From NCBI RefSeq assembly GCF_020745735.1, contig NC_083409.1:15223873-15287872 (forward strand): a stretch of DNA of 64,000 bases. Direction: 5' to 3'. A program made the translations under genes and the position numbers. This stretch comes from Hemiscyllium ocellatum (taxonomy: Eukaryota). Under the pieces are notes generated by a model. The model made no database searches. It saw only the letters and a program-made list of their open reading frames with translations, and was not told where the DNA came from. This document shows, piece by piece, positions 4,060-63,965 of the stretch. Numbering within the stretch: the stretch's first letter is position 1; the number at the start of each line of letters is the position of its first letter.

Positions 4060-4350
4060 TCCCCGGTCCTGGAATACCATGAGCACAGGAAGTGAGGTCA
4101 GTGACAGCAGTTGGAACTCCGGGTTTCGGAGCTTGAGCAGCAGCTGGTGTCAGTGAGGAACGTCCGTGAGGCTGAGAGCTCCGTGGAGAGCACGTTTCTA
4201 GATGTGGTCACTCTGCAGCTTCAGAATATGCAGGGAGAGAGGGAATGGGGAAGCAGCAGACAGTCCAAAAGTCCCCTGAGTGCATCCCACTCTCCAACCA
4301 GGATTCAGTTCAGAATCCTGATGAGAATGTTGAGAATAGGGGTCTTTAGT
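4060..4350 (+). mobile_element. CR1 ORF1 N-terminal fragment
   Basis: ELRVSELEQQLVSVR coiled-coil-like motif. Paralogous copy at 39780-40140 (-). Confidence 0.65.
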
Positions 4351-37517: not shown

Positions 37518-37545
37518 CACAGTGACACAGAGCCATACAAAAACC
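37518..37545 (+). other. 12-bp-spacer RSS of V2
   Basis: CACAGTG 37518-37524 + ACACAGAGCCAT + ACAAAAACC 37537-37545. Confidence 0.98.
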
Positions 37546-37953
37546 TCAAAGCACACAGAATCACCTCCTGTACTGACACATCCACGGTTATATAAAATGC
37601 ATAATAATGGACACACAGTCCCACCGCCTGAACTGTCATATCCCACAGTTAGATCTAAATGAAACTGATCAAATTACCCCATGCTGGGATTGTCACTGCC
37701 CACGACACACTCCAGTCCCTGTGGTGTCTCAACGCTCACTGAAGGCCTCAAGTTTCCCCCTTCCACTGCATGGCCACATGTGAAGAACAGCTGCAAGATT
37801 TAACAACAAAAAATGAAGTTCACAACCCAGAGGCAGAGACAGAAAGACACATGAATGAGGGAGAGACTGATAGGGGCAAAAAGAGGGTGAGAGTGACCGA
37901 CAGACTGGGAAATAGGGAGAGGGTGAGAGTGACAGAGGGAAGCAGAGAGCTGA

Positions 37954-37992
37954 GGTTTTTGTACAGCCTCTACACTGGGAGCTCTCACTGTG
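37954..37992 (+). other. 23-bp-spacer RSS of J2
   Basis: GGTTTTTGT 37954-37962, a 23-nt spacer, then CACTGTG 37986-37992. Confidence 0.98.
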
Positions 37993-38027
37993 GCTTACGT
38001 TCGGTAAAGGAACCAAGCTCAGACTGA
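37993..38027 (+). CDS. IGKJ: Ig kappa J segment, cluster 2 (LTFGKGTKLRL)
   Basis: G CTT ACG TTC GGT AAA GGA ACC AAG CTC AGA CTG A, followed by a GTAAGT donor at 38028. Confidence 0.96.
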
Positions 38028-38397
38028 GTAAGTAAACCTCAATCCTCCGTTATTAACCCTTTCAATACTGAAACTTTCTAAATCACAAATGCTGAATTGA
38101 TGCAGGTGTTAGTGGGGAGCTGCAGTGAATGAAATGGTTGAATGAGGAGCACTGTGTCTAACAGGGTGTCCAGCTGTATTTCTGTCGTCCTATTGCCCTG
38201 CTTAAGCAGCAAGATATAAGTCAGTAAGTTTTACTCACCGTGTGGAGGAGCTCTGTCCATTTGCAGCCTGTGGTCCCATTCCTGCAGCATGGAGTGAAAT
38301 CAGTGAGTAGCCTCCTGCCAGTCTCAGTGTGACGGACACGGGGCAGAGTTTGATGTGAGCTCTGGCTCCCTGTCCCAGTCTCTGATCTCACTGACCT

Positions 38398-38433
<36 letters not shown>
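38398..38433. repeat. (CAG)12 trinucleotide repeat in J-C intron of cluster 2
   Basis: Counted directly. Confidence 0.95.
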
Positions 38434-38435
<2 letters not shown>

Positions 38436-38489
38436 CAGTGAGACACCGAGCTCCCACCTCCCCCAGCTTTAACTCTGCTCAATCACACA

Positions 38490-41400: not shown

Positions 41401-42300
41401 CCGCATTGTACTCCACCTGCCACTTCTTTGCACATTCTCTCAGCCTGACCAAGTCCTTCTGCAATCTCCCCCACTTCCTCAACTCCACTTGTCCTTTCAC
41501 CAATTTTTGTGTCATCTATAAACATATGAACAATATCTTCAGTTCCTTATCCAGATTGTTAATGGATAATATGAATAGTTGTGGTCCCAACACAGATCCC
41601 TGCAGATCGCCACAAAGCACCACCAGCCATCCAGAAAAAAATCCCTTTGTCCCTACTCTCGCCTTTGTGCCGGCCAGCCAATCCTCTACACTTCGCAGTG
41701 CCTTGCTCCTGACAGCATGGGCTCTGATTTGACTTAGCAGTCTCCTTTATTGTACCCTGTCAAAGGCCTGGTGGAAATCCAAATGGATCACATCCACTGG
41801 CTCTCCTTTGTCTAACTCACTTGTTACCTCCTCAAAGATTTCTAACAGATTTATCAGGCATGCCTCCCTTTGATGAAGCTGTGCTGACTCAGCCCAATTT
41901 TACCAGGCTGCAATTTTACCAGACTTAAGGGTGAGATTCCAAATACCTGCAATCTCACCCTTAGGTAGACCTCTAAAATCTTACCAATGACCGAGGTCAG
42001 GCTAACCAGCTTATAATGTCCCATCTCTGCCTCCCTCCTTTCTTAAACAGGGATGTTACATTCACTATTTTCCAGTCTTCTGGGACCACTCCTGACTCCA
42101 GTGATTTCTGAAAGATCACAGCCAATGGCCCTACAATTACCTTAGCTATCTCCATCAGAACTCTGGAGTGTAGTCCATCGGGTCTGAATGATTTATCCAC
42201 CTTCAGACCTTTCAGCTGCCTCAACCCCTCCACCTTAGTGATGCCCTTTCCACTCACTTCTGCTCCCAACTCTCTTGAAGGTCAGGTGTACTGGCTGATA
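38490..42300 (-). mobile_element. Stack of antisense CR1 fragments (3' end, ORF1, RT) in J-C intron 2
   Basis: MRNVSYEDRLKTLGLFS; CYLPGAKVKDV; LKVDKSFRPDGLHSRVL. Confidence 0.8.
40255..40592 (-). mobile_element. V-SINE
   Basis: Reverse-complement SINE head and V-domain. Confidence 0.88.
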
Positions 42301-42304
42301 TTCA

Positions 42305-43998
42305 AGCATCATGGTTAGCCACAGGTGAGGTGCCAGAAGACTGGAGGATAGCGAAGACTGTGCCATTGTTCAAAAAGGGCTGAAAAACAAAAGCCTGGGA
42401 ATTATAAGCTTAACATTTGTGGTGGGTAGTTGTTTGATAAGATAAGATACACATGCATTTGGAAAGAGTGGATTTGATTAGGAGTTGTCAGCATGACTTT
42501 GTGAGTGGGAGAATATGCCTCACAAATCTGTTAAGTTACTTTGATGAATTGACCAGGAAGGTTATGAGGGCAGGATGGTAGACGTGGTCTATATGGGTTT
42601 CAGTGAGGCCTTTGATAAGGTTCCACATGGCAGGCTGTTATGGAAGGTTAGATTGCATGGAATCCAAGGTGACCTGGCAAATTGAATACACGATTGGCTT
42701 GATGGTAGAAAGCACAGGGTAATAGGGGAAGTATCCTTATTGTACTGGAGGCCTGTGACTAGTGGAGTGCCTCAGTGGTCAGTGCTGAGCCCATTGCTGT
42801 TTGTTATCTATAACAATGTTTTGGATGAGAATGTACAAGGCATGGTTAGTGAGTTTGCTGATGACACTCAAATAATTTATGGGCGGCACGGTGGCACAGT
42901 GGTTAGCACTGCTGCCTCACAGCGCCTGTAGACCCGGTTCAATTCCCGACTCAGGCGACTGACTGTGTGGAGTTTGCACGTTCCCCGTGTCTGCGTGGGT
43001 TTCCACCGGGTGCTCCGGTTTCCTCCACAATCCAAAGATGTGCGGGTCAGGTGAATTGGCCAAGCTAAATTGCCCGTAGTGTTAGGTAAGGGGTAAATGT
43101 AGGGGTATGTGGGTTGCGCTTCGGCGGGTCGGTGTGGACTTGTTGGGCCGAAGGGCCTGTTTCCACACTGTAAGTCTAATCTAAGCAGCATCGTGGACAG
43201 TGCGGACAGTTATCAGAAATTGCAGCAGGACCTTGCTCAGCTGGGGAAGTGGGCCGAGAAATGACAAATAGAGTTTAATACAGATAAATGTGAGGTCTTG
43301 TATTTTGGAAATTTAAAGCAAGGTAGGAGTTTCATGGTGAATGATAGGGACCTTAAGGAATATAGTGGAACAGAGGGTCCTTAGAATTCAGATAAGCAGT
43401 TCTCTGAAAATGGAGTCACAGTAAATAGAGCAGAGAAGAGAGCTTCATCAGTCAGGGCATTGACTACAGATGTTGGGAAGTTATGTTGCAGTTATACAGG
43501 ACACTGGTGAAGCCACACTTGGAATATTGTGTTCAGTTTTGGTCACCTTGTTCCAGGAAGGATGTTATTAAACTGGAAAGAGTGCAGAAGAAATTTGCCA
43601 GGATTCAATCGTTTGGGTTAAAGGGAGAGTACTTTTTTCTTTAGAGTGTAGGAGACTGAGGGAGGACCTCATAAGATTATGAGAGGCATGGATAGGGTGA
43701 ATTCACTCGTTCTTTTCCCCAAGGTTTGTGAATATGAGCTAGAGCGCATCAGTTTAAGGTTAGAGGGGAAAGAAAAAAAGGGAACCTGAGGGGCAACCTT
43801 TTTACACATAGGATTGTTCGCATATGGAATGAGCTGCCAGTGGAAGTGGTTGAGGTGGGTACATTAATAACATTTAAAAGGCATTTGGACAAATACAGCA
43901 AAGGAAAGGATTCAGAAGGATATGGGCCAAGTGTAGGATTAGCGTAAATGGACCAGTTTGGTCCAAATGGCCTGTCTCCATGCTGTAGGACTCTGTGA
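42305..43998 (+). mobile_element. CR1 RT/3' fragment nested in the antisense CR1, specific to cluster 2
   Basis: WRPVTSGVPQWSVLSPLLF, SEFADDT motifs and a CR1 tail. Absent at the equivalent position of cluster 1 (~2970). Confidence 0.85.
42881..43184 (+). mobile_element. Young V-SINE nested in CR1 RT
   Basis: CpG-rich and nearly identical to 56014-56303. Confidence 0.92.
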
Positions 43999-44001
43999 CA
44001 T

Positions 44002-44616
44002 TGTTATGGACCAGGCCAGACCCTTCAAAACATTTTAAGAATGCAGCCCAGACCTTACCTTTTCGAATTGTGTTCAGCAAATGTAACCTGGATATTCCAG
44101 GAATGATACAACTGGCCAAACCACTCAGCTTGAAGGAAAAGAGTATTTATTTACAATCAAAAGAAAACAGAATTTAGAATAACTTAACTATTTGAAAACC
44201 CAACTATTTGAAAAAATGTAACTTGACAAAGAGTTGTTCCAATTTGCTGTAATAGCCTTGGCAAAAAGGTAAATATAAACACAGGGGTTCTTACAGGAGA
44301 GGAATTTCAGAAAGTGAGTCCACTGGAAAATGTTGAATTGGGGAACCTTTCTCACCAGCAGCTTTCTTTATCCAGGAGCTTCCAACCGACTGTTTGTCAA
44401 AAACAGCAAACTGGAAGAACTGGCCATTCTCCTTTTATTGGACAAGTGTTTAATATAAAACCTAAAAGCCTTTTCCCTGACTGTTGCCTTAGGCAGTATC
44501 TGTTAGCCATGAGCAAAGTCCCTAACCCAGACAAATTGGAACCTCTGCCTTTACAACCCCTCTTGAAAAAAAATCCAAGGACAACTCAAACTTGTGAAAT
44601 GAGCAGCATTGCCACA
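44002..44616. mobile_element. Possible solo LTR
   Basis: About 615 bp, bounded by TGT...ACA, with no ORF and AATAAA-like signals on the minus strand. No TSD was found. Confidence 0.35.
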
Positions 44617-45900
44617 CTACTGTGAAAGCTGATTTAAGGCACCGATGCAGTTTTTCCACCATTTCTTTGTTCCCCATTACTACTTCTGCCTTTTCCAGTG
44701 GTACAATTTCTATTATTGACTCCCTCTTGCCTTTCATATATCTAAAGAAAACCTCTTGCAATATTCTTTTATGTTACTAACTCGCTGACCATTATATTTT
44801 ATTTACACACCCACCCTTACTTTTTTTTAGTTACTCTCTGCTGTTTATTAAAGGCTTCCCAATCCTCCGGCTTCCCAATAATCTTCACCACATTGCCTGT
44901 TTTTTCTTTTGCTTTTATGCTGACCCTGACTTCCCTCATCAGCCATGGTTGCCTTGGCCTCCACTCAGTACCTTTCTTCTTCCTTGGGTTAACTTCCTGC
45001 TCTGCCTCCCAAATTACCCCCAGAAACTCCTGCCATTGCTGCTCCATTCTCTCTTATGCTCAGCTTCCTTTCTTACCAACTCTGGCCAGCTCCTCCCTCA
45101 TGTCTTTGTAGTTACCTTAAGTTAATTGCATTACCGGTACAACTGACTCCAGATTCCCTGTCACAAACTGCAGGGTGAATTCTGTCATATTACGGTCAAT
45201 ACCCCCAAGGGATTCCTTCACCCTAAGTTCCCTAATCAGGTCTGCTTCAGTACACATCACCCAATCCAGAATTGCCTGTTCCATAGTGATCTCTACCACA
45301 AGCTGCTCTAAAAACCATGTTGTAAACATTCCATTAATTCCTACCCATGAGATCCCCAAACAATTTAATTTTCCAGTCTCCCTGCATATTGAAGTCCCTC
45401 ATGACTATTGTAGCAGGGCCTTCTCTATCTCCTGATTTATTTTCTTCCTCATATCCTGACTGCTGCTGGGGGGTCCTGTGCTAAGTTCTCATCATGCTCT
45501 TTCTCCCTTGCAACTCCTCAACTCTACCCACACAGATTAAATGCATTCCAACTCTAAATCCCTTCTTGTGATTGATCTCATTTCATTTCTTACCAAGAAG
45601 GTAACCCCACCCCCATCTGCCCATCAGCATGTCCTGTCAATCGGATGTGCATCCTTGAGTATTTCATTCCCAGCCCTCAACCCCTTACAGCCAGGTCTCT
45701 GTGATACTCAAAACATCGTACCTGCCAATTCCAATCTGTGTTACAAGCTCATTTACCTCATTTCGGATACGCCCTGCATTCAGGTACAACACCCTCAGTC
45801 CTGCACTGACTGTCCTCCTTTTCATAGTTGTCCCCTTATGCACTGTGCCTAAAATTAATTTTCTGACCCTTTCCATAATCTATGTCCTATTAATTGTTTT
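44617..45900 (-). mobile_element. Antisense CR1 ORF2 endonuclease half in J-C intron 2
   Basis: AGLRVLYLNAGRIRNEVNEL...YDVLSITETWL; homologous to 1440-2950. Confidence 0.85.
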
Positions 45901-48215
45901 GGGAACTTTACTAACCTCTCCTGAACCCTGCGTCACTTTAATGATTTTAAAGTCCTTGGGAACCTCAATTTGTGGCATCACTCTGTCTACCTTATTCCGA
46001 ATGCGCTATCATAAAAAGATTTTAGGTTATTTCTACTGTCTGTATTGCCTTGTTACAATATGACATTCACAAATTCTGATCCTTCCTTTTATTTTCTGGT
46101 AACAATCAAACCCATCACTAACCACGACTCCCACCTTCGCCTGTGCCTTTCATTTTCTCACGTTTTGTGCAACTGAACCCATTTGCTTTCTCTTTGGGTT
46201 GACTTCAGGTCAATATTTATCCCTGAAATATCACTGAACATGCTTCATAATCTCATTTATTTTTGTGCGATATTGCTGTGTGCAAATTGTGTTTTCTGCA
46301 TTACAACACTAACCAGTGTCCAGACAAGTCCCTGACTCTCTGTAAATGCTTTGGGAGAGCCTGACATACAAGTCTCTCTTTTGATGCACTGGGAACCTTT
46401 CAGATATCAGAGATGCCATTCCGTGGCTCTCCTAGACAGACAGCAGGACGGTGTCTCCTGGTGTCCTGGTCAATATTGATTCCCTAATTAGCATCACTAA
46501 AAATCTGATCCTCGCCTCATTGTCACCCAGCTCTCTGGGATCTTGCTGAGCACAGTCTGATGGAAAGAGCCACTGCAACATCCTTAGGTGGAGGCAGGTG
46601 CAACATAAATGCAAGTCTTTCTTTGAGGTTGGAGTCTCCAGAACATGACCCTTGCCCGTTGGATGCACGCTTCCATCTTCCAGGGAACATGGGATCATTA
46701 AGAGCAGTGTCACTGTCTGATCCCAGGACACTGAGACTCTTTGCACCCTCACATTTGACCTTACCCCAGTGCTGAGCTGGAAGACTTGAAACAAAATCTG
46801 GAACCTTCTACATGGACACCCAACGTGACTCCTTCCTGAAGTGTGCTGATCCAACTCTGCTCCAATGTTGTTGGATAAAGTTCTCCCGAGCTGTGAGTGA
46901 TCGGAGGTTTGTTAAAGAGGTGTCGAACTCCACCCCACATACCAGCTCTTGCTCCATAGCTCTGGAGGCTTTGGTGTTTCAAGTGAATATCCAGGTGTTT
47001 TTTTCAATGTGATGAGGGTTTCTGCCGCTCTCACCCTTTCAGCTAGTGAGGTCCTGACCCCACCAGCCACTGGGTGAAACAATTACTCCTCAACTCCCCT
47101 CGAACCCTGCCCCCAATTCATTTCCATCTCTCTCCATGGTTATTGCCCTCTGTGCTGATGGAAATCAGTTCTTCCTACCCACTCTATCCAGACCCCTCAT
47201 CATTTTACACACCATCGATCAACTCTCCCCTCAGCCTCCTGTGTTCCAAAGAAACCAGTCCCAGCCAAACCAATCATTCCTCAAAGCTAATACTCCTCAT
47301 TCCTGACAAAATCCTCCACTGTCCCCATCTCTCGGGGGATCACATCCTTCCTGCAATATGGTGACCAGAACTGCACACAGTTCTCTCATTGTGCTCTAAC
47401 GGGGCTTCATTTGAGGTCAGAAGTCACACGACACCAAGTTATAGTCCAACAGACTAATTTCAAATCACAAGCTTTCAGAGCTCTGTTCCTTCAGCACTGA
47501 AGTCACTTCACCTGAAGATGGAGCAGCGTCTCACAAGCTCGTGATTTTAAATAAACCTGTTGGACTGGAACCTGGTGTCATGTGACTCCTGAACATGTCC
47601 ACCCCAGTTGGACACCAGAGCCTCCACATCATATCGATAGTTTCACATCTTTGCCGAGACTCTCTCTTTGGGAGTGTCACTCTTACTCTTTTGGGAAAAG
47701 ATTCTGAATGATCTCTGTGCCTGTCTCATCCTTGGAGACCTCCCACTGCCCTGTCACTGATCTCCCATCAAGGCGATGGTTCCAGTGCTCTTTTATCAAA
47801 TTACCACACAGTTTGGTAAAATGGATTGTTCCCAAATCAAAACTTTTACACTTGCTCCACGGTTCTCCATTTCCATCCCTATTCTCAATCTCACTGAGTT
47901 CCGATCACTGTCACTAAAATGCTCCCACATTGATAGCCCTTCCAGCTGCCCACATTCATTCCTCAAATGGTGGTCACGGACTGTCCCTTATCTTTCTGCT
48001 GCGTCACCATCACCTTCTCAGAGACAGTTAGGGATGGGCAGCGACTGGCTCTGCCAGTGCCATACACGTCCTAAAAAGCAATGTTTAAAATGCCAGTGCT
48101 TTGTCAGGTCTGCTAGGTACTGGGTACAAATGTTCAAACGTTTTAGCAGTTAATGTTCAGAGAGTCTATGTACCTTCAAAAGGCAGGGATTAAAATTGTT
48201 TCTCTTGTCTTTCAG

Positions 48216-48544
48216 TCCGTGACAACTCTCAGCCCAAGCTGACCCTGCTGCCCCCCTCCCCGGAGCAGGTCAATGCCAAGGGCACTGCCACCCTGGTATG
48301 CCTTGCCAATCACTTCTATCCCGATGAGCTGGAGGTGCAGTGGAAGAAGGACGGTGCAGTCATTTCGGACGGGGTTCAGACCAGCAACTACCTGCGAGCT
48401 TCGGACAGCACCTACAGTGTCAGCAGCCTGCTGACCCTCTCTGGGTCTGACTGGGAGTCCAACGCTCACTTCTCCTGTGCCCTCACCCATGTGACACTCC
48501 CCTCTCCCCTCAGCAAGAGCATCAGGAGATCAGAATGTGTGTAG
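48216..48544 (+). CDS. IGKC: Ig kappa constant-region exon, cluster 2
   Basis: Pyrimidine tract plus AG acceptor at 48214-48215, in phase with J2. Reads RDNSQPKLTLLPPSPEQVNAKGTATLVCLANHFYPDELEVQWKKDG...YSVSSLLTL...FSCALTHVTLPSPLSKSIRRSECV-stop: a C1-set Ig domain with a terminal Cys for the H-L bond. Confidence 0.96.
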
Positions 48545-49683: not shown

Positions 49684-52522
49684 AATTAGACCTGGGTTTT
49701 CTTTACTTTTCAAATGAGATGGAATTGCCCCGTGTGTCCCTGGGGTCAGATTGAGAATGTTCAGTCTGGGAGTCATGGCTGGGGGGGGTATAGTCAATGA
49801 TAAACTGGTTCCACTTTCTGCTGTCATATTCTGTAGCCCCTGGACCATCTCAGTGACAACCATCCAGGGCTCAGGGTGGATTCCAGAGCAGCTCATTGTC
49901 CTGACTGTTGTGTTCCTCAGTCCACACGTGGCTCCAGCAATCTCACTCCATGGTTCTTGTATCAGTGGGAACCATGGGGCTGAAATCTTATCCAAACAGA
50001 ATCTCACACAGCAAGGAGGCTGCTGGTGGATCAGAAACGCCTTGGATTCAGTCCCAGATTCCACTGTGGCTCTTTCATCAAACACAGCATTAGCACACTG
50101 ACACCACATTCAGAGGGCAATCCTGAGATGGGGCAAGTTTGGTTCTTGATTCCAATGTGAGGAAATGGGGGCTGGGTGTGAAATGTCTAGTCTGAAACTG
50201 GTGGGGGTACTTTATAATGAAGAATAGAAACTGATTTCAGGATAAAGTCAGGTGTTGATGGGAGTGAGGAATATCTCAGTGATCTGTCTCCAGAATCCAC
50301 AGCCTACACACATCCTTCTGTCAGACACTGAAGTCTGAGAAAGTAGCTCATCGACATCCAATATTTTTCCAACCTTCCCAGAAAAGGTGAAATATTCTCT
50401 GTCTGAGTGATTCCCTGGGCAGGGCATTTTAAAAAGGGCTGTGGGAAAGGAACCGTTGGCTCTCAATGACAAAGTCAATGGAAGGATGTGGAGCTGACAC
50501 TGTGAAACGTAAGGGCGCAGAGGATGACAGCAGAAGCAATTCAATGTTGTCACTCTCTCCTTTGGTAATAATTAGTTTTCCCTCATAATGTGCTCTCTTG
50601 TATTCGATCCACCTGTCTTTATTGCTTTGCTTCTTTTGACTTGAGTCTGTGGGTAGTTCCATCAAAACCCAATCTCCTCACACTCATCCTGGCCCCTGAA
50701 GAGATTGGTTAGAGAAGACTGAATTACAGCAAGTGACACAGATATTTCTTATCTTACCACATTGAATCAAACCATTGAGCCCATTAATCTTCAAAACAGA
50801 TTCCAGCATTAAAGTCACATTTGTTGGTTATAAAAGTAACGTATTTCTCAGGCTGAAAGAAGGAAGCTTCAGACTGAGAAATGATCTAACTTAACCCAGA
50901 TCCTGAGCATTGGCAAGTGGAACTAGATTGCGTTGGGATATCTGGTCAGCGTGGACAAGTTGAACCGAAGGTTCTGTCTCTGTGCTGTCTCTATGACTCT
51001 AATAGCACGACAGAACAAAGTGATATCAATTAGCACCAGTATAAATACAGGGCAGCCTATATCCTGCAGTTGGCACTCAGTGCAGCTGGCACAGAGGGAT
51101 GCTGGGAGGTTTGGTCAATGTGGGAGTTCGGTGAACTGTGGGAAGGAGGTCTACCTTTGCTTTTCCAAACTGGTTTGGAACTGTCACTTCAGCTGATGGG
51201 AGCCTGCACATGCACTTGGTTTGAAAATAGCAAAATAATAAACAAGGGGACAGGAGTCTGTTGACCAGATCAGCTGGGAAGAGCTTTGTGTAAGGAACCA
51301 TATCAATAGTATGCTTAGGAAACCTCAAATAGGGAAATCCTAGAAATGAAAAGTACTGAAACATTGATCCAGAGACTGAGGACAATTACTAGTTTCATGA
51401 AAGAATTGATTTCTTTCATTTGTAAGTGGATCAGCATTTGTTCATTAAACTGAAATGATTCAGGGTAAATACATCTGTAGTGACTGTATAAATCTACAGC
51501 AACTCCCACTCAGGGGGTTTGGATTGGAAGCTGAGTTGTAAGAATCCTGATACATCAGGGAGGGGCAGCGATACCTGGAGACTTTGTTCCAGATGGAAGG
51601 TGTAAGCCTCAGGACTGGGCAGTCCAATTCCATGTTAGTAAGGGGCAGGAGGGTATGACCCAAGAGGGGGTCAGATAAGGGTTTGGAGAATACAGTGGGA
51701 CAGGAAAAACCCCCACTCTTCGAAACTCCAGTGAGATCAAGGCCAGCCTTTCCGATCCTTCCTCACCACACAGCCCCCTCATACCAGGGATCAGTCGGGT
51801 AAAACTCCTCTGAAACACTTCCAATGGATTTATATTCTTTCTGCAATTAGGAGACCAAAAGTTCATACAAACCTTGAGATGTCCAGGAAGAACTGAAACA
51901 TCACATTCTCACTTTCAGATCCCTAATCACACCTGCTCTTACTTGCACCAGCCTTGTTACTGTCCATCTCTCATTGTCATGTACACAGTGGCGCTGAGCT
52001 GCTTTCTCGAACTGTTACAGTCTGTGTGCTGTAGGTAGACCCACAATGTGCGGAGGAAGGGAATTCCATGAGCCTGACCCAATAACAATGTAGGAACAGC
52101 GATATATTTCAATGAGAGGAACTTGCAAAGAGTGGTGTTCCTGTGTATCTGCTACCATGTCCTTCTTGATGGACGTGGTCATGGGTTTGGAAGGTGCTCT
52201 CTCAGGATCTTTGCTGAACCTCTGCAATGTATCTTGTAGATAGTGCTCACAGCTGTTACTGAGGGTCAGTGTGGAGGCAATGGATATATGTCGATGTGGT
52301 GCCAATCAAGCCGGCTGAAATTTGATAAACAAGATTTAAATAAAATAAAATAACATAAAACAGGTTAAAATGAAATAAAATCATCAAAAACTGTGGCTTC
52401 TTTTTGATAAAACATCACTGAATCCAAAACATTATTACCTCCTCTCTCTAATGTGGCTGCACCTGTTCCCTTTCTCCAGCATCTTGTTTTATTTGAGATT
52501 TGCTGTATTTTACTCTTTTAAT

Positions 52523-52734
52523 CATTGGTTATAAGAGAAGCATTGGTCAGCACACTGGGGAGATTTTCCCTGAGATGGTCACAAAGCCCTTTTATTCACA
52601 TCGACCTGAGAGGGCAGTGGTTTAACCGATCATCCAGCAGATGGCGTCTTTACCTTTGCCAGCCTCAGGATAGTGCTCCAGTGTCTGGAGTGGGGCTTGA
52701 AACCTGCAGGTTCAGGTGACGGTGTTACCACTGA
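52523..52734 (-). mobile_element. Old Deu-domain-type SINE relic, highly conserved between clusters (candidate 3' enhancer)
   Basis: The reverse strand has a decayed tRNA-like head (cccactccagacactggag) and a Deu-like core (gccatctgctggatga...ttaaacc...tgccctctcaggt). It differs at about 5 of 212 positions from 63623-63833. Confidence 0.6.
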
Positions 52735-53629
52735 GGCCGTCTATTCTTTCCTGGGATGTGGGTGTCACTGACAAGACCAGCATTTGTTCTCCATCCCTAA
52801 CTGCCCTGAAACTGAGTGGCTTGCTCGGCCTTTCAAATGGCAGGTAAGGGTCAGCCACATTGCTGGAGTCCTGGCAGAGTCAGATGTCTACAACAGGTCT
52901 ACAAGAACAAGGCCCTTCGGCCCAATGAGCCAAAGCCAGTCAAAACAACCATCTCACTATTCTAATTCCATGTTCCAGCAGTTGGCCCGCAGCCCTGTAA
53001 ACCTTGGCATCACAGCTGCACATCAAAGTACGTCAATGTTATGGGAGAGCTTCTGCCTCAACTACCCTTACAGAAAGCAAGTTACAAATTACCACCACCT
53101 TCTGCATGAAAGCGTGTTTCCTCACATTCCCTCTTAATCTTCTGCCATTTCCCTTAAATCTATGCCCGCGGTCATTGATCATGAAATAACTCCACATCAT
53201 CAAGTCACCCTTTATTTACACATCAACCATCCTTGACTGTAATGTCTCATATAAAGTTAGGCACCAGAGGCACAGGGTCCCTAACACCCAACCTGTTTGA
53301 TGTCAGTAAGTCATCTCCCTGTTATATCCTTGTAAAGATTTGAGCTTTTCTTGTGAAACTCCTTTGGGATTTTTTAATGGCACAGAGTCTCCACACACTC
53401 CCATCTCTCTTGATGCTCACCCTTGTCTGGTTAATTCTTCCCATTTCCTTCTCTTCTTTCAGTTCATTCCATTTCAGTAAAGTCTGTGATATTTCCACGG
53501 ATGATGTGTACTTGAAACCGCCATAGAGAAGCTCCTGTGAAGAAGCACTACAATAGAAGGAAGGCTGATATTTGCAGGAAGCCTGGACTGTGCCCTTGTG
53601 AACCTTTTCCAAACATTTCCATGTGATCT

Positions 53630-55150
53630 GTCAGCTTCCTTCAACTCTTCCCATTTCCTCCAAATCCAGTGGGTGGCCATGGGTCCCAGCTATGTCTGCT
53701 TGTTGTCGGCTACATCAAACAACACCTCACCAGTACATGCACAGGCACCGTTCCCCAAATCTTCCGCCATTACATCAGTGACTGCATCAGTGCTGCATCC
53801 TGCACTCAGGCTGAACTGGAGCTGTTCATCAACTTTGCTAAGAACTTCCAACCTGCCCTCAAATTCACGTAGTCTATCTTGGACAAATCCCTCTCCTTTC
53901 TTGACCGCCCCATTTCCATCTCCGGTGACAGTCTAGGAACAGACATTTACTGTAAATCCACAGACTCACACAACTACCTGGTCAACACCTCCTCCCAACC
54001 AGTATCCTGCAAGAACACCACCCCGTTTTCCCAATTCTTCCATCTCCGTAATATCTGCTCGAACGAGGAGATGCTCCCCTCCCAAGTGTCCCAGATGTCC
54101 ACTTATTTTGAACAATGTACTTTTCCCACCTCTGCCATCCAGAAAGCCCTCCACCGCACCTCCTCCATTCTCTGCTCCCCAAATCTAAACACTCCCCTCC
54201 AAAATGCAATAGAGACAGGGTCCCCCTTGTCTTCACCTTACGTCCAATCAATCTCCGCATCCAACGTATCATCCTCAAACAATTCTGACAACTCCAGCTC
54301 GACCCCACTATCAAGAACATCTTCCCCTCCCCACCCCTCTCTGCCTTCCACAAGGACTGTTCCCTTTGCCAATCCTTGGTTTTCACCACACTTCACACCT
54401 ACCCCCTCCTCCCCAACAAAACCCTGGTACCTTCCCCTGCAACTGTAAAAGATGCAAAACCTGCCCACACACCAAACCCTGTCATTTCCATCCAGGGCCC
54501 CAGTCCTTCCAGGTCAGACAGAGGTTCACCTGCCTCTCCTCCAACCTAGTTTATTGTATCGGTGCACCCGTTGTGGTCTTCTCTGCATCGGTGAGACCAA
54601 ACGTAAACTAAGGACATGTTTTGATGAGCATCTCAGCCAGGCTCACAAAGGCTGACCTGGCCTCCCAGTCACTGCCTATTTCAATTCCCCTTCCTATTCC
54701 CTCTCTGACATGACTATCCTCTGCCTCCTCCATTACCATAAGCAATCAGACTGCAAATTGGAGGAACAAATAATTATCTTTTGCCCGGGGTTGCTTACAA
54801 CCCAGAGGAATCAACATTGAGTTCTCCAGTTTCAAAAAGCCTGCCTTTCCCAACTTTCGACTCCCTTTCCAGTCCCCCTCCTCCATTCTATTCCACTTAC
54901 GGACCCTCCCTTCCAGCCACCAAATGGATTCATTCCTCCCATCGACTAAGCACTTCCAACCCTCTACCTGTGTTCATCCATCAATACCTTCCACTCCACC
55001 ATTCCCCTCCACCCACGCAAACAACCGATCCCACCTTGATTTGCAGCTCCCCTTACCCCCACCTGCAGTTCTGAAGAAGGGTTATACCCGAAATGTTGAC
55101 TGCTCCACCTCCAGATTCTGCCTGACTTGCTGTGTTCTTCCAGCCTCCTG
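53630..55150 (+). mobile_element. Penelope-like element (RT + GIY-YIG endonuclease), degenerate
   Basis: FNSSHFLQ..VAMGPSY RT motif; FTCLSSNLVYCI and RCTRCGLLCIGETKRKLRTCFDEHL GIY-YIG motif; tail CTGAAGAAGGGTTATACCCGAAATG at ~55072-55096. Confidence 0.85.
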
Positions 55151-56013
55151 TAAGCCTCCATCCCAGCCTGGTAACGATCTCGGACACTGGAAGGAAATGC
55201 CCAGGGCGCAGGTTAACGTGGTGCAAAAAGCCTTTCAGCTGAAGCTTCAGTGTTTGCCTTCAGTGTGGATTTTCAGTTACTGATTTACTCCCCTGTTATG
55301 TGACAGGAAGAAAGAACACTTGTTGGTGCAGTGTTTTTTTGTAATCGTCCAGGATATTTAAAGCTGCCTGCACAGTGCAATCACCTTCACAAGACAAAAT
55401 GCTGAGGTCCCAAAATCAGCAAACGAATGATGAGACAAATCCTTTTGGTGGCATTAGTTGAATATTGAGCAGGATACCTGAGGGAATCTCTTCAGAATGG
55501 GATCTTGTCGAGCCCCCTGAGGTGGAGGGATTGGGGTCTGGATGGTGCTGGTGGGGCTTTAAATGAACATCCCATACATAACATTGTGTCAGAGTTCACT
55601 GCAGTCTCAGCCTGGATTCTGTGTTCTCATTTCTGAGGTGGCTTTCAATGCAATGACCATTTGACTCTGAAGCAGGAGCATTGCCCATGGAGTCACCGTC
55701 AGTAACAATGTAAACTGTGTAGCTCTGAAAGGATATCATCTCATTCATCAAATCTGTTTCTGCCCCTCTGCAGGCTGACCAGGCTGCTGATGCCTTTCCA
55801 ATACTCCCAGGTTTTCCCATGTGCCACAGCTCATTCTCCTGAAGGATAGTTTACTCAGAGTCAAAAAGTGTGGTGCTGGAAAAGCACAGCAGGCAGGCAG
55901 TTGTGCTCAGGCCGAGGACATGACCTTGTCCCTCTGTCAGATTCTCTTCGAGAAACTCATGGCTCACCACCGCCCTCTCCAGGACAGTTAGGGAAGGGCA
56001 ACAGCAAGGAGAG

Positions 56014-56303
56014 AGATTAGATTAGATTACTTACAGTGTGGAAACAGGCCCTTCGGCCCAACAAGTCCACACCGACCCGCCGAAGCGCAACCCACCCATA
56101 CCCCTACATTTGCCCCTTACCTAACACTACGGGCAATTTAGCACGGCCAATTCACCTGACCCGCACATCTTTGGACTGTGGGAGGAAACCGGAGCACCCG
56201 GAGGAAACCCACGCAGACACGGGGAGAACGTGCAAACTCCACACAGTCAGTCGCCTGAGGTGGGAATTGAACCCGGGTCTCAGGCACTGTGCAGCCACCG
56301 TGG
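56014..56303 (-). mobile_element. Young V-SINE
   Basis: (AGATT)n tail and CpG-rich body. Confidence 0.92.
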
Positions 56304-58334
56304 TGGGGACGCGTCGCTGCAAGTGCTGTACTCTGCAGTTTGGTGACCCACTTTGATAGCTGTTTGTTCAATCTTTGAGTGCAATTCATTTTTTTGCTGA
56401 TCCCAGCGTCAATCCAAAGGACTCTCCACCTTTCAGTCTGACAAACCAGGTTCACCCATGTCATGGCTCTGTTTCTGACCGAGAGTCCAGTCTTTCAAAG
56501 AGATGAATTCAAGCCTCACCAGTTTGATCATTTTAATTTTACATCATTTCTCCTGATTTCTCCCGGGATGGGGCGGGCGTTGACGTGTTGGTTATTGGTT
56601 GCCTTCCCCTAATTGTCCTGGAGAGGGCGGTGGTGAGCCATGTAATATCTGGAAAGGAAGGCGCTGGAATTTGTACAAAAAAAGACATGAAATTCAATGT
56701 GATGTTCACAAATGTTCTTTTGGCGAGGGTGCCTGGTCTGTGACTCCTGCCCCACCGTGACATGATCCATTTTTAATGACCCATGATCTGGCTCAGCAAA
56801 GAACTTCGTCCAAGCAACTGGGGGTGGGCAATATTTATGAAGCTCACCAATGATGAAGCAGAAATAATAATGAGAAGGAATAATGCAGCTCCTTGCTCTC
56901 TGCCTTTTAGCCTCTGAGCCAGCACACTCTCACCGTTCTGGGTCTCTAATCCTCTAACATTAATTCATTAAAGTGTGGGAATATAGGAAGAGGTTTTATT
57001 TTGAACTATAAGGTCTCTTTTCTCCGTGACTCTCTCCTTTTCAACCCCCTACAATCCTGTCACCAGATGCTTGTGCTGACAGCCTTGTTGTGCAGAGTGA
57101 AAGCTCTCGGTGTTCTCTGAGGCCTCACTGCCTTGTGTCTGTCTCCACTGCAACATAAGACAAATGACGTGTTTCTAAAACCCTGTTGAAATTAAAAGCC
57201 AGCAAAGAAAATGACTGCAACAAGAATTGAGTTGGTCTTGTTCAAAAAAATAATTTTCATTTTAAAATTACATTTTTGTCAGTGAGTGACAAAGGAAAGA
57301 TGGGGGTCCAGGATTGCTGCAGCCTCTGTCAGAACATAGGGCCCAGGAGCAGGAGCAGGCCTTTTGGGAGCTGCTGTGCCAATGAAGAAGATCACTGCTC
57401 ATCTGGGTATGGTCTCGCCCGTACTTTCTGCTTCCCCACCCCCTCCCATTATCCTTAATTGCCTTGTTCATCAAAAAATCTGTCGACTGTAACCTTGTGC
57501 CAACTCCATGAGTGAACCTCCATTCCCATGTAGAGAAGAGAATTCCACAGACTATCAATCCTCAGCAAGAAAACCCCTCCTTCCCTTTAAACTGGAGACT
57601 GGTTTGTGTTAAACCTGCCCTCCAGTCCTCGTCTGCCCGATAACAGGAACCACCCTCTCAGTATCCAGCCTGTGATGTCACCTTCAGATCAGAAACTGGT
57701 TAATGAGAGAGAACAGGTTACATCAGTGAGACTTTTCCCCAGAGATGATGAACAGTGTTGATGTAAATTGTTTTTTCCAGTCCAGAGTCCAGAACAAGAG
57801 GGTTGTTAAAATTGTAATTCAGACGATTTCAGGAAAATTTCTTTCCGACAGAGTGATGGAAATCTGGAACCCTCAATCCAAAATAAAAAGCTGTTGAGGT
57901 TGGGTTTCAATATCCATTTTCTCAGGGCAGTACGGTTTACAGGACAAAGGGAGAATGTATTCCAGGTCAGCCATGGCCTGATTAACTGGGGAACTAGGTC
58001 AAAGCAACTGATTGGTCATTCCCACTGGAATCCACTGGAATGACTACTGGTGTGTTTGCGCTAATGGAAGGAGTCATTACCCATAGTCTTCAGCAGCTGT
58101 GCAAGTCCTCCATAGTAACTAGAAAGCAGCTGTTTCACTGTGCCTGAACAATACAAAGTCAGAGGACTCACTACACCAGGTTCTAGCCCAACTGATTCAT
58201 TTGAAATCACAAGCTTCTGAAGCGCTGCTCCTTTATCAGGTGTACCCCAGTCCACCATCGACATTTCCACATTACTGAACAGTCCAAATAAACTGGGGCT
58301 CTGTGAGGATCGAACCAGCTGGATCTGTACAAAC

Positions 58335-58337
<3 letters not shown>

Positions 58338-58395
<58 letters not shown>
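58338..58395. repeat. (AG)n microsatellite
   Basis: Seen directly. Confidence 0.95.
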
Positions 58396-60799
58396 ACATC
58401 TTTTGAACCAGGATACCTAATTGCACCACAATAAAAATGCTCTGCATGCTGTGATATATCAAAAATAAGCACTTTGGTGTAACTTTTGATTGTCCTCACA
58501 GTGTGCTATTTTATTCATGATGTGATACACGGAGACTATGTCAACGTTGGGTGGCAAAAAGTATATTTTCTCCACTAATCCCTTTCCAAAACGCGCTCTC
58601 CATCTTGCTTTAATCCTTATTGACTCTTCTACAATTGCCTCTATTTCCTCACTCCTTTCCGGTCCCAAAGGAACATATGGACAGACTTCATGACCCCACT
58701 CTGTCTTAAGTTCATGTGTAGTGTATTGGAGCTTCGGCTCCTCCCTCAGGCCCAGGTGTAGGGGCCTGTTCAACAATCTGCACATTGTCCTTTGTCTCTT
58801 TCTGAATGAACTGGATCAAGTTGCAGTAACGATCTGGCAACAAGGTGTCTTGTCTAAAATGTTCCCAGCATTGGATACAGAACTGGCTGTGTCAGAGGAG
58901 AGAGCATAGTGATGGAAGGATGGATTTCAGAATGGAGGGCTGTGTCTTGTGGGGTTTTGCAGGGATCAATGATGGGACCTTTGCTGTTCATGGTCTCCAT
59001 AAGTGATTTGGACGAAAACATGGCTAGTCTAATTCATGAGTTTGTGGATGCCACAAAGATTGCTGGAGTTGCAGTTAATGATCAGATTATCAGAGGATAC
59101 AGCAGGACATAGATCAATTGGATGCATGGATAGAAAATGGCAGATGAAGTTTAATCCAAATAAATGTGAAATGATGCATTTTGAAAGATGAAGCACGTGG
59201 CAGAATACCTGCACAGTGAATGGCAGAATCCATTGGAGTATTGAAATGCAGAGGGATCTCGGTGTACATGTTCACAGATCACTGAGAGTGGCAGCACCGA
59301 AGGTAGTAAAAAAGGCAATGGCAGGCTTGGCTACATTGGGAGGAGCACTGAGGATTAGGATAGACAAGTTATACTGCAGCTTTACTGAACTTTAGTTTGG
59401 CCACACTTGGAATATTGCATATGGTTCTGGTCACTATGACCAGAAGGATGTGGATGCTTTGGAGAGGGTACTGAAAAAATGTACCAAGAATGCTGTCTGA
59501 TATGAGGGATTTTCCCAGGGTAGAGGGGTCAGTTACTAGGGGACACAGGTACAAGGTGTGGGAGGGGGTGGGTGGGTGCAGTGGGGAATTAAAACAGATG
59601 TGTGAGGTAAGTATTTCACACAAACGGTGGTGAGGGCTGGAACACGCTGCCAGTGGAAGTGGTGGAAGCAGACACAATAGCAGCATTCAAGAAATACCTG
59701 GATGAATACACGGAAAAGAAGGGAATAGAGGGATATGAATCCTGTAGGTGAATACAGTTTCGGTGAGGAAGGGCAAAATGTGTCAACACAGGCTGGGAGG
59801 GCCGAAGGGCCTGTTCCTGTGCTGTATAGTTCCTTGTTCTTTGGTCCCTGCTGTTGAATTGGATTCAAACCAACAATGCAGGAAGACTCATGATGAAGTG
59901 GGTGTTTGTTTGATTTCTCACTTGTGTTAATACAGTTTTAAATGTGTCTGCGTACTTTCCCCTCTCTCTCTGTGGAGGGTGTCACTGTCATTGTCTCCAC
60001 CCGACCTTTCCACTCTCATAGTGATAGCAGTTTTTGCATTCCTTCTGTTCGGGGAGCTGTCATTCCCCCGCCCATATTACAACAATGACTAGACTTTGGA
60101 ATTTCTCCATTAGCTGTAAAACATCTTTGAACATCCTGAGCTCATGAACAGTGTAACAGAAGGCAATTCTCTCTCCTTTTTGTTTCCTCTCCATGCCTTC
60201 CCATCTGTCTCCCCACAACATCCCTCCCTTGTTTAAAATCTGGAATGAATTATGAATCTCTGGGAGAATTTAATCTGTGGCAACATTGAGACTAACAACA
60301 ACCACCTCCTTGGTGGGCTTTGAGTGTGAAGGTCAATAACACTCTCACTGGGACTTGATCTGGGTTGTCTCCAGTCAGTCAGTGTTATTGTTCTGGGGCC
60401 AGACATTACTGACCAACCTTAGACCCTGTGCTCCGATTGAGATGACGGATGACCTGCACTGGGCTTTAACACACTGTTACCACAGCACAGAGAGTGAAAT
60501 CATGTAGCGCTGGTTAGGCAGAATCCCTGGAGCAGGAGAGTCGACGTTTTGAGCATAAGCTCTTCATCAGGAATGGAGAGGAGGGAGTGAGGAGTCAGAG
60601 AGATAAATAGGAGGGAATTGGGGCTGGCGAAAATGTAATGAAGATTGCAATAGGTACGTGGAGGTGGGGGGTGACAGTGATAGGTCAGAGTGAAGGGTGG
60701 AGTGGATAGGTGGGAAGGAAGATGGACAGGTAGGACAGTTCAAAAGGGTGGTGCCGAGTTGGAGGGTTGGATCTGGGATAAGCTGGGGGAGTGGAGATG

Positions 60800-61879: not shown

Positions 61880-63965
61880 TCAAGAGGCTTTCCCCATTGT
61901 TGGTTTGATCAGTGACGTAACAAGGAAGCAGCAGCTGCCCCATGAACTCCAACAAAAGAATGAGAACAGGCTCTTCATATGGAGCTGGCTCCCGAGAATC
62001 CAATTCAACAGCAGGGACCAAAGAACAAGGGACAATACAGCACAGGAACAGGCCCTTCGGCCCTCCAAGCCTGTGCTGATACATTTTGCCCTTCTATACT
62101 GAAACTATCTTCATCGACAGGATTCATATCCCTCTATTCCCTTCCTATTCATGCATTAGTGCAGGAATTTCTTGAATACTTCTATTGTGTCTGCTTCCAC
62201 CCCCTCCTCTGGCTGTGTGTTCCAGGTAGTCAACTTCCTCTGTGTGAAATACTTGGTTTGTACACCTCTTTACAATGAATTCCCCCAAACCCCTGCACCT
62301 TGAACCTGCGTCCCCTAGTATTTGACCCCCTCCACCCTGGGAAAAAGTCTCATTATTTCCACTCTGCCTATCCCATTCACAACTCTGTAAACTTCTATCA
62401 GGACGCACCTCATTTTCCTGCATTCCAGTGAAAACAAACTCAGTCTCTCCAACCTTTCTTCAGAACTACAATCCCCCCATACCAGACAATATCCTGGTAA
62501 ACATTTTCTGCACCGTCTTCAAAACATCCACATCCTTCTTTTTGGACTGTGTGCAGTTCTATGCAACCAGAACTGTGTGCACTATTCCAAGTGTGGCCGA
62601 ACTAAAGTTCTATAAAGCTGCAGCATAACTTGTCTGTCCTTACACTCAATGCCCCTTCCAATGAAGGCAACCAGGCCATCAGCCTTTTTTACTGCCTTAC
62701 CTCCCTGTGCTGGCACCTTCAGTGATCTGTGAACATACACACCCAGATCCCTCTGCATATCAATACTCCAAAGGATTCTGTCATTCACTGTATAATTCCC
62801 ACCTGTACATCACCTTCCAAAATGCATCACCTCACATTTGTCTGGATTAAACTACACCTGCCATTTTTCTGTCCAAGCATCTCTATCCTGCCATATCCTA
62901 GATAATCCTTCTCATTCTCTGCACTTCTACCAATCTTTGTATCAATTGTAAAATTACTAATTAGACCAGCTACGCTTTCCTCCAAATCATTTATGTAGAC
63001 CATATACAGCAGAGTTCCCTGTGGAACACCACGAGTCACAGCCCTCCATTCTGAAAACCATCCCCCCATCACTGCCCTCTGTCTCCTCCTACTCAGCCAG
63101 TTCTGTGCCCAATGCTGGAAACATTTTAGACAAGACACCTTGTCGCCAGCTCTTACTGCAACTTGATCCAGTTCATTCAGAAAGAGGAAAAGGACAATGT
63201 GCAGATTGTTGAACAGGCCCCTACACCTGGTCCTGAGGCAGGAGCCCAATCTCCAACACACTGGCCTCACTTCACACCAACCTTCACACAGTGCGGGGTC
63301 ATGAACTCCGGCCATCAATCCCTCTGGGACCGGGACGGGGTGGGGGAACAGGGACAATTGTAGAAGAGTCAATAAGGAGTAAAGAAAGATGGAGAGAGTG
63401 TGTTGGAAAGTGTTCAATGGAGGGAACATACCTTGCGATACCCAATACTGACAGAGTCTCCATGTATCACAGAATGTACAAAACAGCACTCCAGTAATGT
63501 GGCTGACCCTTACCTGCCATTTAAAAGGCTAAAGAAGCCACTCAGTTTCAGGACAGGTAGGGATGGGGAACAAATGCTGGTCTTGCCAGTGACTCCCACA
63601 TCCCAGAAAAGAATAGATGGGTTCAGTGATAACACCGTCACCTGAACCTGCAGGTTTCAAGCCCACTCCAGACACTGGAGCACTGTCCTGAGGCTGGCAA
63701 AGGCAAAGACGCCATCTGCTGGATGATCGGTTAAACCACTGCCCTCTCAGGTCGATGTGAATATAAGGGCTTTGTGACCATCTCAGGGAAAATCTCCCCA
63801 GTGTGCTGACCAATGCTTCTCTTATAACCAATGGCATTAAAACAGATACATAAACAAAATACTGCAAATCTCAAATAGAAGCACGATGCTGGAGAAAGGG
63901 AACAGGTGCAGCCTCTGTGGGAGAGGAGGTTTAACTTTTTGGGTTCAGTGATGTTTTATCAAAAA
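61880..63965 (-). repeat. Right arm of tail-to-tail inverted duplication (3' flank of a predicted third cluster)
   Basis: Reverse-complement homology to both parts of the left arm, which are contiguous here. The arm probably continues beyond the window end. Confidence 0.85.
63623..63833 (+). mobile_element. Paralogous copy of the conserved Deu-type SINE relic
   Basis: About 98% identical to the reverse complement of 52523-52734. Confidence 0.6.

What the first reader, a model, noticed from the sequence alone, without database searches (positions are those of the whole stretch)
52523..52734. Old Deu-type SINE relic ~4 kb downstream of C is ~98% conserved between clusters: possible exapted 3' enhancer
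Seen: 52523-52734 and the reverse complement of 63623-63833 differ at about 5 of 212 positions, while the immediate flanks are roughly 85-92% identical. The relic looks strongly diverged from a SINE consensus, yet both copies keep four CpGs, CAGATG overlapping ATGGCG (E-box plus YY1-like, 52638-52646), CAGGTG (52713-52718), GGGGAGATTTTCCC (kB-like, 52557-52570) and two CCAAT boxes. Established: Deu-domain SINEs such as AmnSINE1 have been exapted as enhancers in amniotes, and mammalian kappa has a 3' enhancer with E2A and YY1 sites. Inferred: selective retention of this SINE as a regulatory element.
Basis: partly seen in the sequence, partly recalled or inferred. Interest (0 to 1): 0.7.

Follow-up and report, generated by a model that had tools for sequence, protein, structure and literature searches.

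The report
Conserved CTCF-type block behind shark kappa genes
A 212-base non-coding block about 4 kb behind a shark antibody light-chain constant exon is kept almost unchanged in two mirror-image gene clusters, and its centre is a strong binding motif for the genome-folding protein CTCF, so it is more likely a cluster boundary or loop anchor than the classical enhancer first proposed; no binding or activity has been measured.

Summary
Block 52523-52734 and the reverse complement of 63623-63833 differ by 4 substitutions and one 1-base indel (98.1%). The rest of the two inverted arms is 81% identical (P about 6e-15). All 4 CpGs are shared; none of 3 flank CpGs is. The block is not a young, high-copy repeat.

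Across species, its 31-letter words are held about equally in organisms A, B and C (0.44-0.78). The implied flank share falls from about 0.6 (A) to 0.3 (B) to 0.1 (C). That argues for constraint rather than gene conversion alone, but it rests on 18 sampled words.

The named E-box, CCAAT and kB-like motifs occur at chance frequency, and there is no PU.1/IRF composite.

The "E-box plus YY1-like" string is CCAGCAGATGGCGTC, a 14/15 match to the CTCF core. These are the only two such sites in 64 kb. They sit near the block's centre and face each other across an 11-kb spacer.

SINE origin is plausible but could not be tested, because no repeat library was available.

Best reading: a constrained CTCF-type boundary or anchor element in the cluster tail.

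The scan has already noted the same kind of element on other DNA of this genome (s1-191592, s1-203492, s1-198135).

The parts
52523..52734 (+). Conserved block, copy A, in the tail of cluster 2. Read on the minus strand it looks like an old tRNA-headed SINE relic.
   Evidence: It is 98.1% identical to copy B. It is the highest identity peak along the arms. Depth is low, so it is not high-copy at 80% likeness or more.
63623..63833 (-). Conserved block, copy B, in the tail of a cluster whose C exon lies beyond the window end.
   Evidence: (I9)
52634..52648 (+).
   Evidence: a 14/15 match to CCASYAGRKGGCRSY. Only 2 hits with at most 1 mismatch occur in 64 kb, against 0.6 expected; the same string is also a 9/11 match to a YY1 consensus.
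63708..63722 (-). Identical CTCF-type core motif in copy B, on the opposite strand. Together with copy A it forms a convergent pair 11 kb apart.
52366..52522 (+). Upstream flank of the arm. It is 73.5% identical overall but holds two perfectly kept islands, about 52394-52416 and 52448-52478; the second contains CACCTG.
52735..52873 (+). Downstream flank, part of a different common repeat, 88.5% identical between the arms. Both of its CpGs are lost in copy B.
   Evidence: higher depth
52874..58502 (.). A 5.6-kb insertion of mixed mobile-element DNA that interrupts arm A. Arm B is the empty site.
   Evidence: One search shows the junction alignment, with GTSCTG-like short repeats at both ends. 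Contigs of organism C cover 53177-53420, so the insertion predates that species split.
58503..59866 (+). Distal part of arm A (LINE-derived). It pairs with 63489-61996 at 77-80% identity and serves as the neutral baseline.
48216..48544 (+). Light-chain constant exon of cluster 2, given as context. The block starts 3,979 bases after its stop codon.
   Evidence: 82-91% identity to shark Ig C-domain proteins.
37518..38030 (+). V recombination signal (12 spacer) at 37518 and J segment (23-spacer signal, coding from 37993) of cluster 2, given as context.

Best explanation
The block is a non-coding element under purifying selection in the 3' tail of kappa-type light-chain clusters. It was probably built from an old SINE insertion. 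Its functional centre is a CTCF-type core motif.

The likely mechanism is as follows. CTCF binds the core in each tail. Clusters 2 and 3 lie tail to tail on an old inverted duplication, so the two motifs point at each other across the 11-kb spacer. Each bound site would then stop cohesin, and any recombinase scanning that rides on it, arriving from the neighbouring cluster. That would keep each V-J-C cluster a separate regulatory and recombination unit. The well-kept sequence on either side of the core may bind accessory factors.

Shown here: the conservation, the motif, its uniqueness in the window, its orientation and the non-repeat status. Inferred: CTCF binding, boundary function and SINE origin.
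For: 1. The block is 98.1% identical between arms against an 80.7% baseline, P=6e-15.
2. All 4 block CpGs are shared and none of 3 flank CpGs is, in a genome with CpG observed/expected of 0.22. One shared CpG lies inside the motif.
3. CCAGCAGATGGCGTC matches the degenerate CTCF core at 14 of 15 positions. With at most 1 mismatch it occurs only twice in 64 kb, both times in the block, against 0.6 expected by chance. With 2 mismatches nothing else in cluster 2 stands out.
4. The core lies near the centre of the block, and 52523-52652 has a single difference.
5. The two cores are on opposite strands and convergent.
6. Word shares: for the block alone they are A 0.50-0.78, B 0.44-0.61, C 0.44-0.61 and E 0.39. 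For the 508-base stretch they are A 0.52-0.66, B 0.36-0.38 and C 0.24-0.28. These imply flank shares of about 0.6, 0.3 and 0.1. For run X10 that is 10/18 against 4/32.
7. Contigs of organism C are 93-96% identical elsewhere in the tail, so neutral drift should have removed most block words.
8. CTCF core motifs are nearly identical from lamprey to human (PMC5504073), and SINEs are known carriers of CTCF sites (PMC3368268).
9. There is no RNA-structure, Rfam, tRNA or coding signal.
Against: - No binding, accessibility or contact data exist.
- The degenerate consensus is recalled from memory. Against the strict published consensus CCACNAGGTGGCAG the site has 4 mismatches, which is not unusual (133 such sites in the window).
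- The same string is also a 9/11 match to a YY1 consensus.
- The kept block (212 bases) is much wider than a CTCF footprint.
- The motif points away from its own C exon, so it is not placed to loop back to its own V.
- The cross-species signal rests on 18 and 50 sampled words and on the assumption that the samples are nested. In organism B, block and flank shares are not significantly different.
- Other islands of 93-94% identity exist in the LINE-derived part of the arms, so patchy gene conversion does occur or cannot be excluded.
Confidence: 0.5

Rival explanations
1. This is a B-cell 3' enhancer. The block would bind E2A-type factors at CAGATG and CAGGTG, YY1 at AGATGGCG, NF-Y at the two CCAAT boxes and perhaps Rel or NFAT factors at GGGGAGATTTTCCC, and would drive transcription and rearrangement of its own cluster.
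For: - It lies 4 kb 3' of C.
- Conservation extends well beyond a single factor footprint.
- CAGATGGCGTC is a 9/11 match to a YY1 consensus, with only 0.04 such matches expected per 212 bases.
- Further perfectly kept islands, one with a CACCTG E-box, lie just upstream at 52448-52478.
- Deu-SINE-derived enhancers are known in amniotes (own knowledge; the family is listed in PMC4824008).
Against: - The E-box, CCAAT, CRE-half and kB-like strings are at chance frequency.
- There is no PU.1/IRF composite, octamer, RUNX or EBF site.
- Earlier notes of this scan place the motif-rich candidate enhancer upstream of V, not here (these are leads only).
Confidence: 0.2
2. The block has no function. It is a patch of recent gene conversion between two nearby inverted paralogues, or among many cluster tails, that happens to include a CTCF-like string.
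For: - The arms are only 11 kb apart and inverted.
- Identity along them is a mosaic with other peaks of 93-94% in LINE-derived DNA at 58725-58875 and 89-92% at 59720-59866.
- 212 bases is a typical conversion tract length (own knowledge).
- Shared CpGs are expected after a recent conversion.
Against: - Conversion homogenises copies within a species but does not slow divergence between species. Yet block word shares are flat across organisms A, B and C while implied flank shares decay from 0.6 to 0.3 to 0.1.
- The expected number of chance CTCF-type sites of this quality in a given 212-base tract is about 0.002.
- The block is the highest peak on the arms.
Confidence: 0.22
3. The block is a transcribed functional product: a small structured RNA, a SINE-derived RNA or a coding exon.
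For: Copy B carries a 112-codon open frame across the block. The minus strand has A-box-like and B-box-like strings.
Against: - The 1-base indel breaks that frame in copy A.
- The frame has no protein homologue.
- There are no Rfam or tRNA hits.
- Folding z-scores are -0.45 and -0.63.
Confidence: 0.03

Closest known systems
SINE-borne CTCF sites of mammals (B2 in mouse and rat, SINEC-Cf in dog, MAR1 in opossum; Schmidt et al. 2012, PMC3368268)
   Same: A CTCF core motif sits inside a tRNA-derived SINE sequence, and such sites can act as chromatin barriers.
   Different: Those sites were spread to thousands of places by retrotransposition of young elements that carry the motif. Here one old relic, not detectably related to any other copy at 80% likeness, was multiplied by duplication of whole gene clusters. 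Whether the motif was in the SINE or arose later is unknown.
CTCF-binding elements of mammalian antigen-receptor loci (Igh IGCR1 and 3' CBEs; Igk Cer/Sis). Recalled from own knowledge.
   Same: CTCF motifs flank immunoglobulin gene segments and bound the domain of recombination and enhancer action. A site lies 3' of the constant region.
   Different: The mammalian 3' sites point back toward the V genes of one large translocon locus. Here each small V-J-C cluster has one strong site, which points away from its own genes toward the neighbouring cluster. No binding or functional data exist in any cartilaginous fish; a literature search found none.
Exapted DeuSINEs (AmnSINE1, LF-SINE) acting as enhancers. 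The family is listed in PMC4824008; the function is recalled from own knowledge.
   Same: An old SINE-like relic is kept as a conserved non-coding element.
   Different: Those are single-copy developmental enhancers conserved across amniotes or tetrapods. Deu identity is unproven here, and the evidence points to CTCF rather than tissue-specific activators.
Mammalian Ig-kappa 3' enhancer
   Same: Its position is a few kilobases 3' of a kappa-type C exon.
   Different: The defining PU.1/IRF composite site is absent, and the E-boxes are not above chance.

Membership tests
CTCF-binding element | Match to the CTCF core motif, beyond chance | tested here: met
   The site is a 14/15 match to CCASYAGRKGGCRSY. 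The only 2 hits with at most 1 mismatch in 64 kb are the two block copies, against 0.6 expected. Caveats: the degenerate consensus is recalled from memory, and the strict published form has 4 mismatches.
CTCF-binding element | Motif kept in paralogous and orthologous copies | tested here: met
   The core is identical in both copies. Block words are held about equally in organisms A, B and C. The per-base state in other species was not seen directly.
CTCF-binding element | Occupancy by CTCF and cohesin; boundary or loop anchor in contact maps | not testable with these tools
   No ChIP, ATAC or Hi-C data could be reached.
CTCF-binding element | Second (upstream, M2) motif at about 20-21 bases from the core | not tested
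   The paper gives the spacing but not the letters. I did not trust a recalled sequence.
DeuSINE superfamily (e.g. SacSINE1) | Homology to the roughly 330-base Deu domain | not testable with these tools
   No repeat library or consensus was available. Alignment to two old relics of the local family at 46200-46375 and 46440-46625 was not significant, z=-0.8 and 0.6. The resemblance rests on my memory of shark SINE sequence.
DeuSINE superfamily (e.g. SacSINE1) | tRNA-derived head with A and B boxes | tested here: inconclusive
   On the minus strand, CAGTGG is followed by GGTTTCAAGCCCC at roughly tRNA-like spacing. ARAGORN and the Rfam tRNA models find nothing.
DeuSINE superfamily (e.g. SacSINE1) | LINE-type 3' tail and target-site duplication | tested here: not met
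   No tail or flanking direct repeat was recognisable. The conserved block ends inside the presumed element, not at its edges.
Ig-kappa 3' enhancer type | PU.1/IRF composite site | tested here: not met
   GGAANNGAAA is absent even with 1 mismatch allowed.
Ig-kappa 3' enhancer type | E2A E-boxes above chance | tested here: not met
   One CAGGTG and one CAGATG are present, with about 0.17 of each expected per 212 bases. CANNTG overall gives P=0.31.
Ig-kappa 3' enhancer type | B-cell-specific enhancer activity | not testable with these tools
   This needs a reporter assay or chromatin data.

The most novel reading that the evidence does not exclude
Every shark kappa-type mini-locus of this subfamily carries, in its tail, a CTCF anchor recruited from an ancient SINE. 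Tail-to-tail clusters therefore face each other with convergent anchors that stop cohesin-driven recombinase scanning and enhancer action at the cluster edge. This would be the physical basis for the long-observed autonomy of shark antibody gene clusters, with no rearrangement between clusters. It would also show that CTCF-based control of antigen-receptor loci predates the translocon organisation.
Probability: 0.3. Interest if true: 0.75.

Novelty: new member of a known kind. Interest (0 to 1): 0.45.

Why it matters
How the many separate V-J-C clusters of sharks are kept independent has no known cis-acting explanation. One cluster is rearranged and expressed per cell, with little or no joining between clusters. 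A conserved CTCF-type site at the edge of each cluster gives a concrete, testable candidate. It also ties sharks to the loop-extrusion model worked out in mouse antibody loci. Finally, it would be an early vertebrate example of a mobile-element relic recruited as a chromatin boundary.

Tried and rejected
- Rfam at gathering and at relaxed thresholds found nothing relevant; the only hit was a chance snoRNA match in the flank.
- ARAGORN found no tRNA-like gene.
- The open frame across copy B has no protein homologue and is broken in copy A.
- RNA folding of both strands is no better than shuffles.
- Sensitive BLAST and nhmmer of the block against the window found only its partner.
- Pattern searches for other copies of the SINE found only two 5'-truncated relics, whose alignment to the block is not significant.
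- Fetching a catshark contig with a related gene failed because the sample's file was too large to return DNA.
- Exact-word scans of metagenome and prokaryote genome collections for the core found nothing, as expected.
- Literature searches found no described shark light-chain enhancer or shark Ig CTCF site.
- The Deu-SINE source paper is not held, and no supplement with consensus sequences is held.
- The table of fixed differences lists 1 position in the block against about 0.9 per 100 bases elsewhere. That is too few to be a test.
- The kB-like, E-box, CCAAT and CRE-half readings were rejected as evidence because they occur at chance frequency.

Full report
**Context**

The window holds shark kappa-type light-chain clusters.

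- Cluster 2 reads on the plus strand. A V segment ends in a 12-spacer signal at 37518. A J segment with a 23-spacer signal starts coding at 37993. The constant exon lies at 48216-48544, and its product is 82-91% identical to shark Ig C domains.
- Cluster 1 is an inverted copy at 7-15 kb. Its C exon lies before the window start.
- The finding's block starts 3,979 bases after the stop codon of cluster 2's C exon.
- Its partner at 63623-63833 is inverted and belongs to a third cluster, whose C exon lies beyond the window end.
I did not verify that.

**The observation**

The MAFFT alignment and counts give 207 matches, 4 substitutions and one 1-base indel over 52523-52734 (98.1%). Segment 52523-52652 has a single difference.

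That single difference is T at 52592. It is read as A by essentially all contigs of four organisms, so it is private to this assembly copy.

The flanks are 88.5% identical downstream (52735-52873) and 73.5% upstream, with 14 gap columns.

**A better baseline**

The homology appears to stop at 52873/63484, but it resumes. In arm B the sequence runs on without a break. In arm A it continues at 58503, after a 5.6-kb insertion bounded by short GTSCTG-like repeats.

Clusters 2 and 3 are therefore the arms of an old inverted duplication centred near 60.9 kb. Over 1,637 aligned columns outside the block the arms are 80.7% identical. Four or fewer mismatches in 211 columns at that rate has P=6e-15.

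The block is the highest peak on the arms. Lesser peaks exist in LINE-derived DNA: 93-94% at 58725-58875 and 89-92% at 59720-59866. Identity along the arms is therefore a mosaic, and some gene conversion cannot be excluded.

**CpGs**

All four CpGs of the block are shared by both copies. The flanks have three CpGs in one copy or the other, and none is shared. Window-wide CpG observed/expected is 0.22.

**Is it a young repeat?**

No.

- The block has no other match in the window by sensitive BLAST or nhmmer.
- When contigs of four organisms were laid at 80% likeness, the bin 52434-52630 had summed depths of 286, 975, 525 and 3.9. These are the same order as the unique bins of the tail, and a hundred to a thousand times below the true high-copy bins.
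- The next bin is about ten times deeper, but it includes a different common repeat at 52735-52873.

**Is it a Deu-type SINE?**

I could not test this.

Read on the minus strand, the block has A-box-like and B-box-like strings and a body that I recognise from memory as the abundant shark tRNA-headed SINE. Against that:

- ARAGORN and Rfam see no tRNA.
- The only other relics of that family in the window, at 46200-46375 and 46440-46625, are 5'-truncated and overlap the block by about 50 bases. Their alignment to the block is not significant.
- No consensus could be obtained from the literature.

The papers do confirm that sharks carry a 463-base tRNA-derived DeuSINE, SacSINE1, and that vertebrate DeuSINEs share a 330-base Deu domain.

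The conserved block ends inside the presumed element rather than at its edges. So whatever keeps it is not a property of the element as a whole.

**Between species**

The block alone has 18 sampled 31-letter words. The 508-base stretch 52366-52873 has 50. If the 18 block words are among the 50, the flank share can be derived.

| Organism | Block share | Whole-stretch share | Implied flank share |
|---|---|---|---|
| A (same species; contigs over 99% identical) | 0.50-0.78 | 0.52-0.66 | about 0.6 |
| B | 0.44-0.61 | 0.36-0.38 | about 0.3 |
| C | 0.44-0.61 | 0.24-0.28 | about 0.1 |
| D | not listed | 0.22 | not derived |
| E | 0.39 | not listed | not derived |

For the deep run X10 of organism C this is 10/18 against 4/32.

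Contigs of organism C are 93-96% identical to the window elsewhere in the tail, including inside the arm-A-specific insertion. A true orthologue therefore exists, and about 5% neutral drift should have removed roughly four fifths of the words.

Block retention is flat across organisms while flank retention decays. Gene conversion homogenises copies within a genome but does not slow divergence between species, so this pattern favours constraint.

Caveats:
- There are few sampled words.
- The nesting of the two samples is assumed.
- The block is multi-copy. At 52592 it is covered by 14 contigs in organism B and 5 in organism C.
- In organism B the block-flank difference is not significant.
- Small, low-coverage runs such as X9 favour multi-copy words and were not relied on.

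**Motifs**

Each E-box type, CCAAT and a CRE half-site has P 0.1-0.3. kB-like matches with one mismatch number 146 in the window. There is no PU.1/IRF composite, octamer, RUNX or EBF site.

It matches the degenerate CTCF core CCASYAGRKGGCRSY at 14 of 15 positions.

- With at most one mismatch, this pattern occurs only twice in 64 kb, at 52634-52648 (+) and 63708-63722 (-), against 0.6 expected.
- The expected number of such sites in any given 212-base tract is about 0.002.
- With two mismatches allowed, the 8 hits match the 6.9 expected, and none lies in another conserved island of cluster 2.

The degenerate consensus is from my memory of the 2007 genome-wide studies. It does contain the strict published form CCACNAGGTGGCAG. 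Against that strict form the site has four mismatches, which is not unusual.

The same string is also a 9/11 match to a YY1 consensus, with 0.04 expected per block. A YY1 reading therefore remains possible.

CTCF core motifs are nearly identical from lamprey to human (PMC5504073), so the motif can fairly be applied to a shark.

The test above is my own.

**Geometry**

The motif is on the same strand as its C exon, so it points away from its own cluster. The two copies are convergent across the 11-kb spacer, which holds only mobile-element debris.

By the convergent rule of loop extrusion (and own knowledge of the N-terminal stop), each site is placed to halt cohesin arriving from the neighbour's side. 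It is not placed to loop back to its own V.

**Other readings excluded**

- The block is not coding. The open frame in copy B is broken in copy A and has no homologue.
- It is not a structured RNA. Folding z-scores are -0.45 and -0.63, and there are no Rfam hits.

**Verdict**

- Best explanation: a constrained cis-element whose core is a CTCF-type site, acting as a boundary or anchor at the cluster tail (0.5).
- Rival: function-less gene conversion (0.22).
- Rival: an RNA or coding product (0.03).

SINE origin is plausible (about 0.7, from memory) but untested.

The same kind of element has already been reported by this scan elsewhere in the genome (s1-191592, s1-203492, s1-198135, and possibly s1-213641, s1-216807 and s1-203663). 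I found no publication on CTCF sites or enhancers in shark light-chain clusters.

SINE-borne CTCF sites and CTCF elements flanking antibody loci are both well known in mammals (own knowledge). This is therefore a new member of a known kind.

Noticed in passing
39926-40130 and 4067-4271: A 205-base island is 97% identical between clusters 1 and 2. It lies in the J-C intron about 1.9 kb 3' of J, amid 70-82% identical surroundings (pair I6). It is a candidate intronic control element or a conversion patch.
   Followed up: no
58725-58875 (pairs with about 63270-63120): A second identity peak of 93-94% lies between the inverted arms, inside LINE-derived DNA, against an 81% baseline. It shows that the arms are a mosaic, so some gene conversion is likely.
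   Followed up: partly
52874-58502: A 5.6-kb composite insertion interrupts arm A of the inverted duplication, with short GTSCTG-like repeats at both ends. Arm B is the empty site. Contigs of a related species cover part of it, so it predates that species split.
   Followed up: partly
52592: The assembly has T here. All contigs of four organisms, including the same species, and the partner copy read A. This is a private variant or an assembly error.
   Followed up: partly
52394-52416 and 52448-52478: Two perfectly kept islands of 23 and about 30 bases lie in the otherwise 73% identical upstream flank. The second contains a CACCTG E-box. The conserved region may be modular and wider than the block.
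   Followed up: no
46200-46375 and 46440-46625: Two old 5'-truncated relics of the local SINE family lie in the J-C intron. The second ends in ...ATAAATGCAAGTCTTTCTTT.
   Followed up: partly
48216-48544 (C exon): The closest database proteins to this shark C domain (81-85% identity) are filed under Aeromonas veronii and Salmonella enterica on contigs of 507 and 990 bases. This is almost certainly shark or fish DNA contaminating bacterial assemblies.
   Followed up: no
38030-48215: The J-C intron of cluster 2 is about 10.2 kb and full of mobile-element copies. That is long for a shark light-chain cluster.
   Followed up: no
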